From assembly GCA_002269645.1 (NCBI GenBank), contig NIVC01003015.1, positions 61,257-125,256 on the forward strand: a stretch of 64,000 nt of DNA. The letters are read 5' to 3'. Shown here in pieces: positions 33,736-53,075 of this stretch. Origin of the DNA: Macrostomum lignano. Taxonomy: Eukaryota. Position numbers and translations under genes: made by a program. Within the stretch, counting starts at the first letter, position 1. Each line of letters starts with the position of its first letter. The notes under the pieces are model-generated. The model saw nothing but the letters and a program-made list of their open reading frames with translations, ran no database searches and had not been told where the DNA came from.

Positions 33736-33940
33736 TAAAGAAAGGTTCTGATGGTTCTGGTCATTGACAGGTTTTGGTCTATAACTCAGGTGTTAACTAA
33801 TATTTCTTCACGAGAAGGAAACCATACTACTAATTGAATTGACTTGTTAAGTAGCAAACACCGTTTCTTGTATCTATATTTTTGTTACTTCACTCGCAGA
33901 CTTGAATTGGCTCAGTCGGCGTGCTTGCGTGCGGGGACAC

Positions 33941-36562
33941 ATGAAGCTTCTGCCGCACCGACGGCTGGCCAGTCCGCGCCGCCTGCTGATCTTGCTGTGC
34001 CTGGCCCTGTCCATTGTGCTGGCCTATTATTTGCTATCGGCTCCAGCGGCTGACAAGGCTGCATTTGTTTATAAAGAGACTGCAGCGGATAAAGAGCCAA
34101 CTAAGATGCTAACGACTGTTTTGGCTCGGCCTCAGCCGGTCGCCGCTGTCCCCCAGTCGGCAGTAAAAGTCACGGATATCGACTGTCTAATTGAAGACAC
34201 CGAACAGGTGGCCTGCATTCGCCGCGGCGCCGATGTCTACGTGCCGTTCGACTATTTGAAACGGCGCTACGAGCTGTCCGGCGGCCTGTCGGAGGACGGC
34301 CGTCAGCTGCACTGGTACGCCAGCTATGCCAGGCTGCACCGGCCCAGTCTGCCCTATTCGCCCTATGGCGCTTTCTTACACTTTGCCGACTATACGGTTG
34401 AACGGCGAGAACGGGTACTGCGAGTGTCCGGCAGGCGCGGCGTCCCAATCAGCCGGCAATGGGATCCGCGCGGGCACGAATACGTTATACAGGTGGCCCA
34501 GTACGGCCTGAGCCATTTCAGCAAGGCTAGCATCGAGACTGAGACAAGACGGAGGGAAAACAGTAACGGTAATAATAATAATAATGATAGTGATGAGGAC
34601 AGCGACGAATTTGCGGCTACGAGATCGTTCGGCGAGGCTGCCACCGACTGGACGGTGCCAGACGGTGCTCAGCTGACTGAACTGACCGGCAACGCCACGG
34701 CCAGGGTCTCTCCGCCGCCTCCGCCGGCGGCACAACAGCAGCGACATTCAACTGCCTCACTGCTTCGTTTCAACGTGCCGGCCGATTTGTCACGCGGCGC
34801 CCGACTAAAACTGGCCCGCGATTCGCCCACCTCGTCCGGTCGGACAGTGCTCCGTCTGGTTGACTTCCTGTCCGTGTCGGCCGCCAGCGTCACCGTCCAG
34901 ATGACGACGAACCGGCGCGGCACCGTCCGGCTGCACTACGGAGTCGGCTATGCCGAGGATTACCGAGCGCCTGGCGACCGATCCGACATCTATTTCGCCA
35001 TCGGCTCGCCCGGCGACGGCTGGCGAACCGTCACTCGCAACCTGCGCGTCGATCTGGAGAAAGCCTTTGAAGATGACGATGACGACAGCGAAGAGGTGGC
35101 CGCCGTTGGCAGCGTCGACATCGGCGCCGCGGATGAGGACGAAAGCGTCGCTGGCGTCGAAGACCGTCAACGTCGGAATAGAAAGTCGCGCGGTCGCGGA
35201 CGCGGTCGCGGACGCAGCCGTCGGGGTACTCGTCGACGGCCCGGCCGAGGTCGCCGACGTCAGCGCAACAACGAAGGCGACGGCGGCGGCGGCAACCGCA
35301 ACCGTCCGGTTGCCATTCGTCGGGTTCAGTGGATCTCCCTGCGCGGCGTCGGTTACCTCGGCCGGGTGGAATTCGCCACCGCGGCCGCTGCCCGTCCGGA
35401 TTTCTATCGGGCAGCCGGCGACTGGCTGGTGGCCAATCAGAACGCCAGCACCGGGGCCTGGCCGATCTGGGCTAGGCGGGCCATCGGCAGCAGACGGGAT
35501 CGGAGGCGGCTGGTGAGTTCGGGATTGCACCCTGACAGCTGACACACTAGACCCATGCCTACCTGTCACCTGACACACTAGACCCATGACCTACCTGTCA
35601 CCTGACACACTAGACCCATGACCTACCTGACAGCTGACACACTAGACCCATGACCTACCTGACAGCTGACACACTAGACCCATGACCTACCTGACAGCTG
35701 ACACACTAGACCCATGACCTACCTGACAGCTGACACACTAGACCCATGACCTACCTGACAGCTGACACACTAGACCCATGACCCACCTGACAGCTGACAC
35801 ACTAGACCCATGACCTACCTGACAGCTGACACACTAGACCCATGACCTACCTGACAGCTGACACACTAGACCATGACCTACCTGAACCCTGACACACGAG
35901 TCCTCCCAACCTGCCACAACCTGCGCCAGGTGCTGCAGCCGGGCTGGTGCTCTGCCATGGGCCAGGGCCAGGCCATCTCCCTGCTAGTCCGGCTGCACCG
36001 TCACTGGCCAGACCGGAGCGACTACCTCGCAGCAGCTGTCCGCGGCCTGGCGCCATTCCACCGCGACGCCGCCTCGGACAGCACAGCCGGAGTAGCGGCC
36101 CGCCTATTCAACCAGTTCACCTGGTACGAAGAGTACCCTGTACCTGGCGGCCTGTTTGTTCTCAACGGTTTTGTCTATTCTCTGTTCGGCCTGTACGACC
36201 TCCGACAACTGCTGACTGACTTGACGGCCAAACAGAATGGCAGCAGCAGCAGCAGCAGTCAGCAGCTGATCGACGGTGCGTCACTGCACTCTCACCTGGC
36301 CAATGTGTCCCGGCTCTACTCAACCGGCATGGAGTCGCTTAAGTCCGTCATCGGCCTGTTTGATCACGGCGACGGTACTTACTACGATTTGCGTCACGTG
36401 ACCAATCCAACTGAGGAGCCGCGCCGGGCCAGGTGGGATTATCACGGCGTTCACGTGACCCAGCTGATGGCGCTCACTACACTGGAGCCGGATCCCAGAC
36501 TGCTGGCCGCGCTGGACAGATGGGAGAAATATCTGAACGGCTATAGAGTGTCGCATAACTGA
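33941..36562 (+). CDS. GLCE: D-glucuronyl C5-epimerase (heparan sulfate), 2 exons: 33941-35512, 35930-36562 (734 aa)
   Basis: Type II signal anchor; YVPFDYLKRRYE, FADYTVERRERV, GVPISRQWDPRG, IQVAQYGLSHFS, GWCSAMGQGQAIS, WYEEYP, FVLNGFVYSLFGLYDL, YYDLRH, ARWDYH, YRVSHN*. Catalytic Glu/Tyr positions are conserved. Confidence 0.95.
35530..35885. repeat. 32-bp minisatellite (GLCE intron)
   Basis: Unit actagacccatgacctacctgacagctgacac. Confidence 0.92.
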
Positions 36563-42315: not shown

Positions 42316-43625
42316 CGAGGGTCACTCAGAAAGTTCTTAGCTTGAACACGAAAACAGCAACAAATGAACTAAAAAACGACTACAAGTGCTCAAAATACTC
42401 TCCACCGGCATTGATACAGGCTTGCATCCTGTGAAACCAGCTGTCGAAGCACTGCCGCCAATCCTCATCCCGGAGCTCCTCGATGATGTTTTTAAACTCA
42501 TTCACAGCTTCTTCCGGTGAAGAAAAGACCTGGCCCTTCAGAATTTCCTTGCACTTCGGAAACAGAAAAAAGTCGCACGGTGCCAGGTCTGGACTGTAAG
42601 CAGGGTGAGTCATCAGCTGGACCCCACAGTCAGCCAGAAACTCCAGAGTTTGAGCCGCCGTGTGCGCGCTGGCGTTGTCGTGGTGCAGAAGCACCCCACG
42701 CATTCCGCACCTTGGGCGCCTCTGGCTCACAGCAGAAAAGACCTTGGGCAGGCAAACCGTTGTGTACCAGTCAGCGGTGACTGTCTGGCGATCTTCAAGT
42801 GAAACGGAAGCCACATGCCCAGTGCGCATGAAGAAACAGGCCACCATCTGCTTGCCGACACTCCGGCTGCGTCGAAACTTGGTGGGGCTGTCCTCGTCTC
42901 CAAAGGTCCACATGGCTGACTGGCGCTTGCTTTCGGGGTCGTATTGATAAATCCAGGTCTCATCGCCCGTGAGGATGTCCCAGATACGCCGGCTGGTCCC
43001 GGATTCGAATTTCTGCAGCATGAATCGGCACCAAGCCACCCTGGTGTCCTTCTGCACGTCCGACAGCTGATGGGGGATCCACCGGGAAGCCAGCTTCCGC
43101 ACTCCAAGGTGTTCGTGCATAATGGCGTGCACACTCCCCGATCCAATACCGATCTCCTGCTGGATCTGCTGGTAGGTCACTCGCCGGTCAGCGGCAATCA
43201 TGCTGGACACAGCGCAGATATTTTCTGGAGTCACTGCGTCACAGGGTCTCCCGGATCGATGTTCATCTTCGAGGCTTTCTCGACCTCGGCGAAACTCAGC
43301 GAACCAGTTTTTGACGGTTGCGTATGAAGGACATACATGGGTGAAAACGTTCTGTAAAGTTTGATACGATTCGGCCGGCGACTTGCCTTGCTTGAAGTGC
43401 AGGTACATCATTGCTCTGAAGTCGCGATTTTCCAGCTTCATTGTTGAATTGAAGATCTCAGGGGGTGAACTGACTTTAACTCGCTGCAGTGGACTCAAAA
43501 GTGGCTGCTTCTGTTTGAAATTTTTGCTGCGATACTTTTAAAAGTTGGTCTTTGCCATAGACAAATTTCATGCTTCTACGTCTCGTGGATCCTACTCAGG
43601 CTAAAGACTTTCTGAGTGACCCTCG
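42316..43625 (-). mobile_element. Full-length mariner transposon (1310 bp), irritans-like
   Basis: TIRs CGAGGGTCACTCAGAAAGT at both ends, extending to about 30 bp with mismatches. TA duplicated (42314-15 and 43626-27), restoring the satellite unit tcagaTAaatg. Confidence 0.97.
42380..43441 (-). CDS. Mariner transposase, intact DD34D (353 aa)
   Basis: MKLENRDFRAMM..., HTH, WIPHQL, TGDETW, HHDNA, YSPDLAPCDFFLF; 34 residues between D2 and D3; no stops or frameshifts. Confidence 0.97.
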   Translation of the reverse strand: MKLENRDFRAMMYLHFKQGKSPAESYQTLQNVFTHVCPSYATVKNWFAEFRRGRESLEDEHRSGRPCDAVTPENICAVSSMIAADRRVTYQQIQQEIGIGSGSVHAIMHEHLGVRKLASRWIPHQLSDVQKDTRVAWCRFMLQKFESGTSRRIWDILTGDETWIYQYDPESKRQSAMWTFGDEDSPTKFRRSRSVGKQMVACFFMRTGHVASVSLEDRQTVTADWYTTVCLPKVFSAVSQRRPRCGMRGVLLHHDNASAHTAAQTLEFLADCGVQLMTHPAYSPDLAPCDFFLFPKCKEILKGQVFSSPEEAVNEFKNIIEELRDEDWRQCFDSWFHRMQACINAGGEYFEHL

Positions 43626-49087: not shown

Positions 49088-50335
49088 GAAAGAGCTACTA
49101 GTAGTGACTTCACACAGGCTACTAGTAGTGACTTCACAGAGGCTACCAGGAGTGACTTCACACAGGCTACTAGTAGTGACTTCACACAGGCTACTAGTAG
49201 TGACTTCACAGAGGCTACCAGGAGTGACTTCACACAGGCTACTAGTAGTGACTTCACACAGGCTACCAGGAGTGACTTCACACAGGCTATCAGTAGTGAC
49301 TTCACACAGGCTACTTGTAGTGACTTCACACAGGCTACTAGTAGTGACTTCACACAGGCTACTAGTAGTGACTTCACACAGGCTACCAGTAGTGACTTCA
49401 CACAGGCTACTAGTTGTGACTTCACACAGGCTACTAGTTGTGACTTCACACAGGCTACTAGTAGTGACTTCACACAGGCTATCAGTAGTGACTTCACACA
49501 GGCTATCAGTAGTGACTTCACACAGGCTATCAGTAGTGACTTCACACAGGCTATCAGTAGTGAATTCACACAGGCTACCAGGAGTGACTTCACACAGGCT
49601 ACTAGTTGTGACTTCACACAGGCTACTAGTTGTGACTTCACACAGGCTACTAGTTGTGACTTCACACAGGCTACTAGTTGTGACTTCACACAGGCTACTA
49701 GTTGTGACTTCACACAGGCTATCAGTAGTGACTTCACACAGGCTATCAGTAGTGACTTCACACAGGCTATCAGTAGTGACTTCACACAGGCTATCAGTAG
49801 TGACTTCACACAGGCTACCAGTAGTGACTTCACACAGGCTACTAGTTGTGACTTCACACAGGCTACTAGTTGTGACTTCACACAGGCTACTAGTTGTGAC
49901 TTCACACAGGCTACTAGTTGTGACTTCACACAGGCTATCAGTAGTGACTTCACACAGGCTATCAGTAGTGACTTCACACAGGCTATCAGTAGTGACTTCA
50001 CACAGGCTATCAGTAGTGACTTCACACAGGCTACCAGTAGTGACTTCACACAGGCTACTAGTTGTGACTTCACACAGGCTACTAGTTGTGACTTCACACA
50101 GGCTACTAGTTGTGACTTCACACAGGCTACTAGTTGTGACTTCACACAGGCTACTAGTTGTGACTTCACACAGGCTATCAGTAGTGACTTAACACAGGCT
50201 ATCAGTAGTGACTTCACACAGGCTATCAGTAGTGACTTAACACAGGCTATCAGTAGTGACTTCACACAGGCTACCAGTAGTGACTTCACACAGGCTACTA
50301 GTTGTGACTTCACACAGGCTACCAGTAGTGACTTC
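49088..50335. repeat. 24-bp minisatellite (~52 units) upstream of the IL-17-like gene
   Basis: Unit gtagtgacttcacacaggctacta; explains ORFs 48991..50313, 49037..50347 and 49062..50192. Confidence 0.93.
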
Positions 50336-50745
50336 GCAAGAAAATAAATAAAACATCTTTAAAAATAAGAAACTTATGTAGGAAACAACTGTAAGAAGAC
50401 AGTTTGTCTTTATAAGAAAGAATGAGATGAGACTCTTTAAAAACAATATTTTAGTGACATTGGACTTGCGCTTCCAAAGCAGTCATTTATGGTGCAAACT
50501 ACACAAATTTTTTGTTTACATTCACTTCCTGTTTAGTTGCTAAATTGGGAACTCCTACAGCTTGGCTTAGCAAACAGATTTGTTTAACCACTTCAATATC
50601 TGTCTCCTAGCTTTACTGATAACAGTTATTTATTGATGTTTAAGTTTTCCTTCCATAAAAAAGTTCGATAGCATAAAAAGCTCGAAAAAAGCTCTCCGCC
50701 CTGCTCATCGGTTGAAGATTTTGATGCCACTTTGGAGGAAACTTG

Positions 50746-52458
50746 ATGAAATCGGAAGAGCGGTCGGTGATAAAAGCAGGTGAGTCACTGCAATGATACT
50801 TGGTGAGTGGATTTGGTGTTTTTTTAAGCTCTAACGTATTCACGACTCAAACAGGTGTATTCACGACTCAAACAGGTGTATTCACGACTCAAACAGGTGT
50901 ATTCACGACTCAAACAGTTGTATTCACGACTCAAACAGGTGTATTCACGACTCAAACAGGTGTATTAATGACTCAAACAGAACAGGTGTATTCATGACTC
51001 AAAACAGGTGTATTCACGACTCAAACAGGTGTGTTAATGACTCAAAACAGGTGTATCCATGACTCAAAACAGGTGTATTCACGACTCAAAACAGGTGTAT
51101 TAATGACTCAAACAGGTGTATTAATGACTTAAACAGGTGAAATAATGACTCTAACAGGTGAGTTAATGACTCAAACAGGTGTATTATTGACTCAAACAGA
51201 ACAGGTGTATTCACGACTCAAACAGGTGTATTAATGACTCAAACAGAACAGGTGTATTCATGACTCAAACAGAACAGGTGTATTCATGACTCAAACAGAA
51301 CAGGTGTATTCATGACTCAAACAGAACAGGTGTATTCATGACTCAAACAGAACAGGTGTATTCATGACTCAAACAGAACAGGTGTATTCACGACTCAAAC
51401 AGGTGTATTAATGACTCAAACAGAACAGGTGTATTCATGACTCAAACAGAACAGGTGTATTCATGACTCAAAACAGGTGTATTCACGACTCAAACAGGTG
51501 TATTAATGACTCAAAACAGGTGTATCCATGACTCAAAACAGGTGTATTCACGACTCAAAACAGGTGAATTAATGTCTCAAACAGGTGAATTAATGACTAA
51601 AACAGGTGTATTAATGACTCAAACAGGTGAATTAATGACTCAAAACAGGTGAATTAATGTCTCAAAACATGTGTATTCACGACTCAAACAGGTGAGTTAA
51701 TGACTCAAACAGGTGAATTAATGACTCAAACAGGTGAATTAATGACTCAAACAGGTGAATTAATGACTCAAAAAGGTGAATTAATGACTCAAACAGGTGA
51801 ATTAATGACTCAAACAGGTGAATTAATGACTCAAACAGGTGTATTAATGACTCAAACAGGTATTTACTGTCTGTAACACTAATTAGGTCGGCCTCCCAGT
51901 CTAAAAATAGAGAGAAGTAGTTAATTAAGACCCCTGATTGCATTATCTATAATTAAACCCGCCAGCCTAAGCCTTATAACTACATGTAATTCCGACAAAC
52001 TTTCAGGCAGCAGAGCGCTGCTCCGTCTTCAACTGCTGCTAATCATCTGCGGCAGGATAGCAACTGCTCACTCGGTCACCGAGGACTTGCGCGAGGTTTG
52101 CGTCGGGGCCGAACTGTTGGGAAAGTTTCCTGACCCAACACGGGAGCCGCTATTGAACACGAACCAATCCTACAAAGTCCACGACTCCATAATTGGGCAA
52201 CCCGTCTGCTCATTTGAGCAGCAAGAAGACTACGATCCAAGGCGGATACCAACAAGGATTTTGCACGTGAAGTGCGCCAGTTCGGATGCGCTGTTGCCAG
52301 GCCGGTGCCTGACTCAAACTGTTCGAGTTCCGGTGCTGAACTCGGTGCATCGGACGGTTAGTTGGGTTGACGACTCGGATGCTAAGCTGCTGGTCTATAA
52401 AAAGGCCTACATTGATTGGGCCATAGACTGCGCCTTTGTCAGCAACTCCAATTGCTGA
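50746..52458 (+). CDS. IL-17-like secreted cystine-knot cytokine, 2 exons: 50746-50779, 52007-52458 (161 aa)
   Basis: Exon 1 MKSEERSVIKAG (phase 1, GTGAGT) joins ctttcAG (phase 1) to give signal peptide ALLRLQLLLIICGRIATA. Core PVCSF...DYDPRRIPTRILHVKC...C...VRVPVL...WAIDCAFV matches the IL-17 signature DxNRxPxxIxxAxC...C...VxVL...CxC. Confidence 0.75.
50835..51865. repeat. 21/22-bp minisatellite filling the IL-17-like intron
   Basis: Units ttcacgactcaaacaggtgta and ttaatgactcaaacaggtgaa. Confidence 0.92.
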
Positions 52459-52794
52459 GAGAGGCAAACTACGGGTCTGCGATCTGGTTTGACCTTCAAA
52501 TACACACCAGTTCAGTCTGCTATTCGACATCTTTTGAAATGAAAAATAGCAATTCGCTGGACTTCATTTTTTCTGTTTTTTTCTAATACGGAAATATAAA
52601 TATTGTAATAGAAATTAGAAAATGTGGATTAGGGATAAGACATATAGTGTGAGATTAGATTAGAGATTACTCGTAGAGAACGCATGCGGGACTTAAGCAG
52701 TGAGTAGAGATAAAATTAGATATGAGAGAGAGGCGAGAGATGAGAGAATGAGATTAGAGGGATGCCATTAGAATGAGGTTAGAGACCTCGCGGG

Positions 52795-53075
52795 ATTTTA
52801 GATTTGGTGTGTGAGAGTAGAGGTGAGAGTGAGATTTTAGATTTGGTGTGTGAGATTAGAGGTGAGAGTGGGATTTTAGATTTGGTGTGTGAGAGTAGAG
52901 GTGAGAGTGAGATTTTAGATTTGGTGTGTGAGATTAGAGGTGAGAGTGGGATTTCAGATTTGGTGTGTGAGATTAGAGGTGAGAGTGAGATTTTAGATTT
53001 GGTGTGTGATATTAGAGGTGAGAGTGAGATTTTAGATTTGGTGTGTGAAATTAGAGGTGAGAGTGAGATTTTATG
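52795..53075. repeat. 39-bp minisatellite
   Basis: Unit gattttagatttggtgtgtgagattagaggtgagagtga. Confidence 0.9.

What the first reader, a model, noticed from the sequence alone, without database searches (positions are those of the whole stretch)
50746..52458. Hidden two-exon IL-17-like cytokine with an altered cysteine knot
The ORF track shows only a headless fragment. A 34-nt ATG exon 1.2 kb upstream restores a signal peptide and a 161-aa secreted protein with the IL-17 DPxRIP...C...C core. The terminal CxC reads CAF (TTT at 52435-37, one base from TGT), and there are extra Cys at the N-terminus and extreme C-terminus, so the disulfide pattern may be rewired. An IL-17-family cytokine in a probable flatworm is of interest for wound and immune signalling; I cannot verify prior description.
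Basis: partly seen in the sequence, partly recalled or inferred. Interest (0 to 1): 0.7.

Follow-up and report, generated by a model that had tools for sequence, protein, structure and literature searches.

The report
Divergent IL-17-like cytokine gene, flatworm
This is a real two-exon gene of the flatworm Macrostomum lignano, already in GenBank as an unnamed "hypothetical protein", and it most likely encodes a very divergent secreted signalling protein of the IL-17 cystine-knot group, a family not reported for flatworms in the literature I could search.

Summary
The sequence observation holds exactly. Exon 1 (50746-50779) ends at AG|GTGAGT, and exon 2 (52007-52458) follows TTTCAG. Together they give a 161-aa protein, and codon 155 is TTT at 52435-52437. 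The window is M. lignano contig NIVC01003015.1. The same model is already deposited as PAA53852.1 "hypothetical protein" from an RNA-seq-derived annotation, so the gene is unnamed rather than hidden.

The IL-17 reading is probable but below threshold:
- Pfam IL17 is the only Pfam family hit, and only when the core is scanned alone: 13.6 bits against a cut-off of 24, E 0.094.
- IL-17 profiles I built give 16-17 bits (E about 3e-7 for one comparison). No shuffle out of 5000 reaches that score, and other window ORFs reach at most 4.4 bits.
- 37 of the top 40 single-sequence hits in a decoy-spiked set are true IL-17s.
- Human IL-17s score 49-72 bits on the mussel-built profile, and Bombyx PTTH scores 18-24 bits on these profiles. 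The profiles therefore prove superfamily membership, not IL-17 proper.
- No relative exists among 1.8 billion representative proteins, so no independent fold prediction was possible.

"CAF" is probably not a sequencing error. In the best-supported alignment Cys3 is also missing, which gives the known "T1C" knot type also found in Mytilus IL17-18 and IL17-21.

The parts
50746..50779 (+). Exon 1 coding part: ATG plus 31 nt (MKSEERSVIKA and the first base of Gly12), phase-1 donor AG|GTGAGT
   Evidence: Identical to the start of the deposited gene span.
50780..52006 (+). Intron of 1,227 nt, GT...AG, with acceptor CTTTCAG. It is mostly a 21-nt tandem array (50836-51861, about 46 copies).
52007..52458 (+). 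Exon 2 coding part: residues 12-161 plus TGA at 52456-52458
   Evidence: tblastn places residues 11-161 at 52003-52455.
52007..52068 (+). Rest of the predicted signal peptide (through Ala32). The hydrophobic core is LLRLQLLLIIC and the likely cleavage is ATA|HS.
   Evidence: Highest hydropathy windows lie at residues 16-30. AlphaFold predicts a helix over residues 5-38. The -3/-1 rule was applied by eye; no dedicated predictor was available.
52099..52101 (+). Cys43, the extra N-terminal cysteine, in EVCVGAELLGKFP
   Evidence: It aligns with the N-terminal Cys...KFP segment of bird IL-17F, P0077.
52207..52275 (+). IL-17 'motif 1' block: C79-S-F (the CPW/SPW position, knot Cys1) ... D88-P-R-R-I-P93 ... 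I-L-H-V-K-C101 (knot Cys2)
   Evidence: Pfam IL17 aligns residues 79-108 to profile positions 3-32. HMMER and hhalign give the same placement. The motif definition is from PMC4517768.
52288..52290 (+). Ala106, at the knot Cys3 position in the best-supported alignment
   Evidence: Pairwise alignment to Mytilus IL17-13 and alignment A4.
52306..52308 (+). Cys112, most likely knot Cys4, followed by LTQTVRVPVL (compare mussel C-RPVSYRIPVF)
   Evidence: Searches agree. Searches give other placements, so this assignment is uncertain.
52429..52437 (+). C153-A-F155: knot Cys5 is kept and knot Cys6 is replaced by Phe (TTT at 52435-52437)
52453..52455 (+). Cys161, the C-terminal residue and the extra cysteine that probably pairs with Cys43
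   Evidence: Terminal cysteines also occur in Mytilus IL17-18, P0006 and P0008. The pairing is inferred by elimination.
50793..50802 (+). Possible alternative first exon: ATGATACTTG|GTGAGTG, also phase 1, which would give MILG-SRALL...
   Evidence: Read. Not tested.

Best explanation
The locus is a transcribed two-exon gene of Macrostomum lignano. It encodes a 161-aa precursor that gives a secreted protein of about 14.5 kDa after signal-peptide cleavage.

The mature protein is a very divergent member of the IL-17 branch of the cystine-knot ligand superfamily. Its core has the invertebrate layout: Cys1 at the CPW/SPW position, then D-P-x-R-I-P, then Cys2, Cys4 and Cys5. Both partners of the Cys3-Cys6 bond are replaced (Ala106 and Phe155). 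This is the 'T1C' knot type already described for some invertebrate IL-17s.

Inferred disulfides are C79-C112, C101-C153 and a third bond, C43-C161, that ties the N-terminal segment to the C-terminal tail within or between chains.

By analogy with the family, it would act as a disulfide-stabilised dimer that binds the fibronectin-type ectodomain of an IL-17-receptor-like protein and signals through a SEFIR adaptor.

Shown here: the gene model, the motif and cysteine layout, and statistical similarity to IL-17s. Inferred: the fold, the disulfide pairing, dimerisation, the receptor and the biological role.
For: Gene model
- Canonical GT-AG splice sites and an exact match to PAA53852.1.
- The GenBank annotation of this assembly was made from RNA-seq-guided transcript assemblies, not ab initio prediction (PMC5730564).

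Family
- IL17 (PF06083) is the only one of 24,736 Pfam families to hit the core. It gives 13.6 bits, E 0.094, over residues 79-108.
- An HMM built from 22 Mytilus IL-17 isoforms gives 16.2 bits, E 3.6e-7 for one comparison. No plain shuffle out of 5000 reaches it (maximum 7.8 bits), nor any cysteine-fixed shuffle out of 5000 (maximum 9.2 bits).
- Of 359 other ORFs in the window, the best reaches 4.4 bits.
- An HMM of mussel plus human cores gives 17.4 bits. The reversed query gives -0.7.
- hhalign against 25 IL-17 cores aligns 74 columns across the whole domain, P 7e-4.
- I ran a single-sequence phmmer search of 145 IL-17s, 725 shuffled decoys and 358 window ORFs. The top 10 non-self hits are all true IL-17s, and so are 37 of the top 40. 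The hits come from both mussels and birds.
- The best pairwise alignment, to Mytilus IL17-13, spans Cys1 to Cys5. It matches RVPVL to RIPVF and YKKAYID to YVKTYID.
- The N-terminal EVC...KFP aligns with EDC...KFP of bird IL-17F.

Cysteine pattern
- The T1C type (loss of cysteines 3/6) is described in PMC11087794.
- Mytilus IL17-18, IL17-21, P0006, P0007 and P0008 read VGCTPV or VGCTAV, lack Cys3, and pass Pfam IL17 at 28-45 bits.

Consistency
- AlphaFold2 on an IL-17 alignment gives core pLDDT of 65-91. The model matches IL-17F and IL-17A in the PDB with TM 0.5-0.65.
Against: - The Pfam gathering score is not reached. The full-length protein gives no Pfam hit at all at E<=10.
- The protein is far more divergent than IL-17s are from one another across phyla. 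Human IL-17A-F score 49-72 bits on the mussel HMM, against 16 bits here. The human-only HMM gives 8.0 bits against a background maximum of 6.2.
- My IL-17 HMMs also score Bombyx PTTH at 18-24 bits and NT-3/NGF at 9-11 bits. They therefore establish the superfamily, not IL-17 proper.
- A T1C-only HMM gives 5.2 bits, below the best shuffles. The shared cysteine pattern is probably convergent.
- The alignment between Cys2 and Cys5 is unstable, with three different placements of Cys112.
- The P and W of the CPW/SPW motif are replaced by S and F.
- There are no homologues in 1.8 billion representative proteins, so the fold match is not independent. The single-sequence model has pLDDT 41.8 and matches nothing.
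- The presence of an IL-17 receptor or a SEFIR adaptor in this species was not tested.
Confidence: 0.6

Rival explanations
1. It belongs to the sister branch of the same superfamily, as a Trunk/PTTH-like ligand for a Torso-type receptor tyrosine kinase, rather than being an IL-17 proper.
For: Trunk is described as the closest relative of IL-17 and shares its receptor-binding logic (PMC11087794). My IL-17 HMMs score Bombyx PTTH at 18-24 bits, as high as or higher than this protein. The protein is too divergent for a reliable tree.
Against: Pfam IL17 hits this protein but not PTTH. The pairwise score to PTTH is 0.1 bits, against up to 13.4 bits to IL-17s. The D-P-x-R-[IYF]-P motif and the N-terminal Cys...KFP segment are IL-17 features (PMC4517768).
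Confidence: 0.17
2. It is a lineage-specific orphan secreted protein, or a non-functional transcript ORF, and its resemblance to IL-17 is chance or convergence on a short motif.
For: There is no homologue anywhere, not even a paralogue, in two large protein searches. Most of the score comes from one block of about 25 residues. The Pfam E-value is 0.094. The gene sits alone among tandem repeats.
Against: The calibrated E-value is about 3e-7 for the directed test, and no shuffle out of 10,000 reaches it. The alignment extends over the whole domain with the cysteines in register. True IL-17s dominate the top of a decoy-spiked search. The mature protein has an even number of cysteines, and both partners of one bond were lost together.
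Confidence: 0.15
3. The gene encodes a canonical CxC IL-17, and TTT at 52435-52437 is an assembly or sequencing error for TGT.
For: TTT is one transversion from TGT, and the position is the Cys6 column.
Against: In the best-supported alignment the partner Cys3 is also absent (Ala106). A Cys at 155 would then be unpaired and give seven mature cysteines. Pfam-positive IL-17s with the same loss exist. Raw reads could not be inspected.
Confidence: 0.05

Closest known systems
Invertebrate IL-17s of the 'T1C' knot type, e.g. Mytilus galloprovincialis IL17-18 and IL17-21 (P0006, P0007, P0008)
   Same: Signal peptide plus a C-terminal knot domain in a protein of similar size. Cys1, Cys2, Cys4 and Cys5 are kept, and Cys3 and Cys6 are both lost (VGCTPV / VGCTAV against IDCAFV). 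There are extra cysteines before the domain and at the very C-terminus. Two exons is the commonest mussel IL-17 gene structure (PMC8353272).
   Different: There is no specific sequence affinity: the T1C-only HMM gives 5.2 bits. The mussel proteins pass Pfam IL17 at 28-45 bits and this one does not (13.6 bits). It has CSF instead of CPW, 10 rather than 14 residues between Cys2 and Cys4, a longer beta3-beta4 hairpin, and one rather than two extra cysteine pairs.
Vertebrate IL-17A/IL-17F (PF06083; PDB 1JPY, 4HR9-type structures)
   Same: The D-P-x-R-[YI]-P-x-x-I-x-x-[AV]-K-C block has identical spacing. The N-terminal Cys...K(N)FP segment is shared. The distance from Cys2 to Cys5 is similar (52 against 50 residues). 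The alignment-guided model superposes with TM 0.5-0.65.
   Different: Vertebrates keep Cys3/Cys6 and have serines at Cys1/Cys4, whereas this protein does the opposite. The score on a human-only profile is only 8 bits. A receptor is not known for this species.
Trunk / PTTH / CFSH cystine-knot ligands
   Same: Same superfamily and strand order. PTTH aligns to IL-17 profiles from Cys1 to Cys6. These are also small secreted dimeric ligands.
   Different: PTTH keeps all six knot cysteines and lacks D-P-x-R before the conserved Pro. It shows no pairwise similarity to this protein (0.1 bits). Pfam IL17 hits this protein but not PTTH.

Membership tests
IL-17 (Pfam PF06083) | Score at or above the Pfam gathering threshold (24 bits) | tested here: not met
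   The full-length protein gives no family at E<=10. The core, residues 62-161, gives IL17 as the only family hit, at 13.6 bits and E 0.094, covering profile positions 3-32 of 81.
IL-17 (Pfam PF06083) | Motif 1: DPNR[IYF]Pxx[IL]xEA[RK]C (Huang et al. 2015, PMC4517768) | tested here: met
   DPRRIPTRILHVKC at residues 88-101 matches 8 of the 11 specified positions with identical spacing (N90R, E98H and A99V differ). Val occurs at the A position in several mussel isoforms.
IL-17 (Pfam PF06083) | CPW (invertebrate) or SPW (chordate) motif, 7 residues before the D of motif 1 | tested here: inconclusive
   The sequence is C79-S-F with the right spacing. The Cys is kept, Pro is replaced by Ser, and Trp by Phe. 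The third position is described as variable (PMC8353272).
IL-17 (Pfam PF06083) | Knot cysteines Cys2 and Cys5 (the bond kept in all types except T1B) | tested here: met
   C101 and C153 fall in these columns in every alignment made.
IL-17 (Pfam PF06083) | C-terminal C-x-C (Cys5, Cys6) with Cys3 four residues after Cys2 | tested here: not met
   The sequence reads C153-A-F155, and Ala106 lies at Cys3 in the best-supported alignment. This loss defines the described T1C subtype (PMC11087794), so it does not exclude membership.
IL-17 (Pfam PF06083) | Motif 2 (YExxxEx[VI][APT]V[GA]CTC[VA]) and motif 3 (LN[SC]VP[IV]YQxILVLR[RK]) | tested here: inconclusive
   Motif 2: YKKAYIDWAIDCAFV matches Y, A, C and V, with I for V. 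Motif 3 could be either CLTQTVRVPVL or LNSV (122-125), depending on the alignment.
IL-17 (Pfam PF06083) | Secreted: N-terminal signal peptide, mature size about 15-20 kDa | tested here: met
   The hydrophobic core lies at residues 16-30 and ATA|HS fits the -3/-1 rule. The mature protein is 129 aa and 14.5 kDa. This was judged by inspection only, without SignalP.
IL-17 (Pfam PF06083) | IL-17-type cystine-knot fold, dimeric | tested here: inconclusive
   The single-sequence AlphaFold2 model has pLDDT 41.8 and no PDB match. The model from an alignment of IL-17s has core pLDDT 65-91 and top PDB hits IL-17F/A, but that test is circular.
IL-17 (Pfam PF06083) | Cognate FN3-SEFIR receptor and CIKS/Act1 adaptor in the same genome; ligand binds the receptor | not testable with these tools
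No paper links SEFIR or IL-17 with flatworms.
Trunk / PTTH | Six-cysteine knot and sequence affinity to Trunk/PTTH; Torso as receptor | tested here: not met
   Only four knot cysteines are present. No Trunk sequences were available, and Torso was not tested.
Neurotrophin (NGF family) / Spaetzle | Sequence affinity to NGF/BDNF/NT-3 or Spaetzle | tested here: not met
   Pairwise scores are -0.7 to -1.8 bits. The protein is not listed against a 3-sequence neurotrophin HMM. There is no Pfam NGF hit.

The most novel reading that the evidence does not exclude
Flatworms may keep an extremely diverged, lineage-specific branch of the IL-17/Trunk ligand superfamily that standard domain scans miss. Its knot would be reduced to two core disulfides plus an N-to-C tether. 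It might signal through something other than a canonical FN3-SEFIR receptor, for example a Torso-like kinase or a flatworm-specific receptor. That would make it a new ligand-receptor pairing in a regeneration model.
Probability: 0.12. Interest if true: 0.7.

Novelty: new member of a known kind. Interest (0 to 1): 0.4.

Why it matters
IL-17 signalling is thought to be ancestral to eumetazoans. However, the comparative surveys I could read list no flatworm species in the parts I could read (PMC4517768 and PMC8353272, species tables; PMC11087794, main text only). No searchable paper links IL-17 or SEFIR with Macrostomum or with Platyhelminthes.

If this protein is a working IL-17-type ligand, it gives a named, testable cytokine in a transgenic, RNAi-amenable regeneration model. 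It would also show that routine Pfam thresholds miss such genes in fast-evolving lineages. It adds an apparently independent case of loss of the Cys3-Cys6 bond.

If it is only a chance resemblance, nothing follows from it. In either case the finding is an annotation gain rather than a new kind of system.

Tried and rejected
- Full-length Pfam scan and PDB sequence search: nothing meaningful.
- Word-indexed search of 5.8 billion proteins with the protein alone: it found only itself.
- Exhaustive phmmer against 1.84 billion representatives: four non-self hits, all bacterial repeat proteins. Their scores are sums of many identical weak matches of about 6.5 bits, with no cysteines aligned, so I rejected them as artefacts.
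- tblastn of the protein against the window: no paralogue or tandem copy.
- Profile search with the query plus two mussel T1C sequences: only three Mytilus-type proteins.
- Profile search with 26 cores: only Mytilus and vertebrate IL-17s among the 120 listed, and no flatworm protein.
- hhalign against six human IL-17s: only the 21-column motif, P 0.0026.
- Single-sequence AlphaFold2 and its Foldseek search: unusable.
- Spliced-leader trans-splicing at 52006/52007 as the source of the start codon: rejected by eye. An ATG joined directly to 52007 reads GCA GCA GAG ... TGC TGC TAA and stops after 11 codons. Exon 2 has no in-frame ATG.
- The bacterial promoter/terminator scan is irrelevant to this eukaryotic gene.
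- Literature searches for IL-17 or SEFIR in Macrostomum, planarians or Platyhelminthes, and for the gene id: nothing relevant.
Full report
**1. What is in the sequence**

The reading frame of the 52087-52458 ORF stays open back to a TAA at 51949 and contains no ATG, so on its own it is headless. An ATG at 50746 opens a 34-nt segment that ends in a consensus donor, GCAG|GTGAGT. The sequence CTTTCAG|GC at 52000-52008 is a good acceptor. Joining 50746-50779 to 52007-52458 gives 486 nt, which is 161 codons plus TGA.

The product is MKSEERSVIKAGSRALLRLQLLLIICGRIATAHS.... Its most hydrophobic stretch is at residues 16-30, and an A-T-A|H-S site fits the -3/-1 rule. The mature protein would be 129 aa and 14.5 kDa, with one N-x-S sequon at N64. 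Cysteines lie at 26 (signal peptide), 43, 79, 101, 112, 153 and 161. Residues 153-155 are C-A-F, and codon 155 is TTT at 52435-52437.

**2. Where it comes from, and whether it was hidden**

The exact 161-aa protein is GenBank PAA53852.1 (UniRef A0A267DZE3), [quoted passage not shown]. The gene is recorded on contig NIVC01003015.1 with a span of 1,713 nt, which is exactly window 50746-52458. The window is the last 64 kb of that contig.

The genome paper states that the deposited annotation was made from a genome-guided RNA-seq transcriptome (StringTie/TACO, TBONE, TransDecoder) and not from ab initio prediction (PMC5730564). The splice junction therefore has indirect transcript support, although I did not see reads. 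The gene is unnamed rather than hidden.

No other gene is called within 10 kb on either side. The gene sits among three tandem arrays, one of which fills most of the intron.

**3. Searches for relatives**

- The word-indexed search of 5.8 billion proteins found only the protein itself.
- An exhaustive phmmer run against 1.84 billion cluster representatives found four other proteins. All are long bacterial repeat proteins. For the best one, the score is nine identical 6.5-bit matches added together, with no cysteine aligned. These hits are artefacts.
- The window holds no second copy.

At ordinary sensitivity, then, the protein is an orphan. That also means no genuine family alignment exists for structure prediction.

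**4. Tests of the IL-17 reading**

*Pfam.* The full-length protein gives no family at E<=10. Scanned alone, the core (residues 62-161) hits IL17 (PF06083) and nothing else among 24,736 families. The score is 13.6 bits against a gathering score of 24, with E 0.094. It covers only residues 79-108, which is profile positions 3-32.

*My own profiles.*
- I took 22 Mytilus IL-17 isoform sequences from the supplement of PMC8353272 and built an HMM. The flatworm protein scores 16.2 bits, E 3.6e-7 for a single comparison.
- The alignment places C79 on the CPW cysteine, DPRRIP on D-x-N-R-x-P, C101 on Cys2 and C112 on Cys4.
- None of 5000 shuffles reaches this score (maximum 7.8 bits), nor any of 5000 shuffles with the cysteines held in place (maximum 9.2 bits).
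- Among 359 other stop-to-stop ORFs of the window, the best scores 4.4 bits.
- A profile of mussel plus human cores gives 17.4 bits. The reversed sequence gives -0.7.
- hhalign against 25 IL-17 cores aligns 74 columns from Cys1 to Cys5, with P 7e-4 and probability 26%.

*Reverse test.* I ran a single-sequence phmmer search with the mature protein against 145 true IL-17s, 725 shuffled copies of them and 358 window ORFs. The top ten non-self hits are all true IL-17s, as are 37 of the top 40. They include both mussel and bird sequences.

*Best pairwise alignments.*
- Mytilus IL17-13 aligns across the whole domain. It matches RVPVL with RIPVF after Cys4, and YKKAYID with YVKTYID before Cys5.
- Bird IL-17F also aligns the N-terminal EVC...KFP with EDC...KFP. 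That is the segment which in IL-17A/F carries the interchain cysteine (established knowledge of IL-17A/F structures).

**5. Calibration, and the limits of that evidence**

- Human IL-17A-F score 49-72 bits on the mussel profile. Mussel isoforms score 16-60 bits on a human profile, where the flatworm protein reaches only 8.0 bits against a background maximum of 6.2. This protein is therefore far more diverged than IL-17s of different phyla are from each other.
- The same home-made profiles score Bombyx PTTH at 18-24 bits and NT-3/NGF at 9-11 bits. The profiles evidently see the wider knot superfamily, so 16-17 bits establishes the superfamily and not IL-17 proper. This fits the published view that Trunk/PTTH is the sister group of IL-17 (PMC11087794).
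- Four things point to IL-17 specifically. Pfam IL17 hits this protein and not PTTH. The pairwise score to PTTH is 0.1 bits, against up to 13.4 bits to IL-17s. The D-P-x-R-[IYF]-P motif is present. The N-terminal segment resembles that of IL-17A/F.

**6. The cysteine pattern**

Published work describes these types (PMC11087794; PMC4517768 and PMC8353272):

| Type | Bonds kept or lost |
|---|---|
| T1A (ancestral, invertebrate) | All three: 1/4, 2/5 and 3/6 |
| T2 (vertebrate) | Lost 1/4, with serines in SPW and NSVP |
| T1B | Lost 2/5 |
| T1C | Lost 3/6 |

Mytilus IL17-18 and IL17-21, and their database relatives P0006-P0008, read ...VGCTPV... or ...VGCTAV.... They have no Cys3 and pass Pfam IL17 at 28-45 bits. 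Two of them also end in a terminal cysteine.

In the HMMER, hhalign, 26-sequence MAFFT and best pairwise alignments, the flatworm protein has Cys1 (C79), Cys2 (C101), Cys4 (C112) and Cys5 (C153). Ala106 sits at Cys3 and Phe155 at Cys6. That is the T1C pattern. Both partners of one bond are gone and the mature protein has six cysteines, so a sequencing error at 52436 is unnecessary and unlikely.

Two cautions apply:
- Other MAFFT runs place C112 at Cys3, with LNSV 122-125 on the LN[SC]VP motif, or in the preceding loop, with R118 at the Cys4 column. The homology of C112 is therefore not settled. In every version, C79 and C112 are the only core cysteines left to pair with each other.
- A T1C-only profile gives 5.2 bits, below the shuffles. 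The pattern is shared with the mussel proteins, but a common origin is not shown.

C43 and C161 remain and are inferred to pair, within or between chains.

**7. Structure**

AlphaFold2 on the single sequence gives pLDDT 41.8, and Foldseek then finds nothing below E 0.6. I also ran it on an alignment of the mature protein with 17 database IL-17s (alignment A6). The core then reaches pLDDT 65-91, and the model's best PDB matches are IL-17F and IL-17A, with E about 1e-4 and TM 0.5-0.65. Because the alignment consists of IL-17s, this shows compatibility with the fold and nothing more.

**8. How it most likely works**

Shown:
- a transcribed two-exon gene;
- a secretory N-terminus;
- an IL-17-type core motif with cysteines in register;
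- statistically supported distant similarity to IL-17s.

Inferred from family knowledge:
- a four-strand knot-like fold held by C79-C112 and C101-C153;
- a third bond, C43-C161;
- dimerisation;
- binding to the fibronectin-type ectodomain of an IL-17-receptor-like protein, with SEFIR/CIKS-TRAF signalling.

Roles in wound or immune signalling are speculation. I could not test for receptors in this species.

**9. Novelty**

The kind is known. IL-17s, including the T1C type, are described across eumetazoans, with many in other lophotrochozoans. No flatworm species appears in the species tables of the 2015 and 2021 surveys, nor in the main text of the 2024 one. No searchable paper links IL-17 or SEFIR to Macrostomum or Platyhelminthes, or mentions this gene id.

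The finding is best described as a probable new and very divergent member of a known family, currently annotated only as hypothetical. Interest is moderate.

**10. Verdict**

- Observation: confirmed.
- Interpretation: partly supported.
- IL-17-like ligand: probability about 0.6.
- Trunk/PTTH-like member of the same superfamily: about 0.17.
- Chance resemblance or orphan: about 0.15.
- Sequencing error producing CAF: about 0.05.

Noticed in passing
window 49094-50335, 50836-51861, 52794-53073: Three unrelated tandem arrays surround the gene: 24 nt x about 52 copies upstream, 21 nt x about 46 copies filling most of the intron, and 39 nt x about 7 copies downstream. They create long spurious ORFs on both strands.
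   Followed up: partly
window 50793-50809: A second ATG (50793) is followed by a second consensus donor (TTG|GTGAGTG, GT at 50803), also in phase 1. It would give MILG-SRALLRLQLLLIIC..., a shorter and more canonical signal peptide than the annotated MKSEERSVIKAG... start.
   Followed up: no
window 50724-50726: An out-of-frame ATG lies 22 nt upstream of the annotated start. If it is inside the transcript, it would open a short overlapping upstream ORF.
   Followed up: no
window 42383-43498 (-): A 372-aa ORF has Mos1/mariner-type transposase domains (HTH_48 at 45.9 bits, plus weak Transposase_1 and DDE_3 hits). It is a transposon copy about 7 kb upstream of the gene.
   Followed up: partly
window 33902-35539 (+): A 546-aa ORF carries a D-glucuronyl C5-epimerase beta-sandwich domain (PF21174, 44 bits). 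It is probably an exon of a heparan-sulfate epimerase-like gene.
   Followed up: no
not in the window: custom IL-17 HMMs: HMMs built from mussel and human IL-17s align Bombyx PTTH from Cys1 to Cys6 at 18-24 bits, and NT-3/NGF at 9-11 bits. Pfam IL17 does not hit PTTH. This fits the proposed IL-17/Trunk/PTTH kinship. It also warns that home-made IL-17 profiles are not family-specific.
   Followed up: partly
P0002-P0005: The exhaustive protein search reported E-values down to 1e-12 for bacterial giant repeat proteins. These scores are sums of many identical weak matches to residues 98-154 and are not homology.
   Followed up: yes
P0006 and P0008 (Mytilus-type T1C IL-17s): These Pfam-positive IL-17s carry two cysteines just before the CPW motif and two after Cys5, including the very last residue. 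This suggests an N-to-C tether as a recurring feature of IL-17s that have lost the Cys3-Cys6 bond.
   Followed up: no
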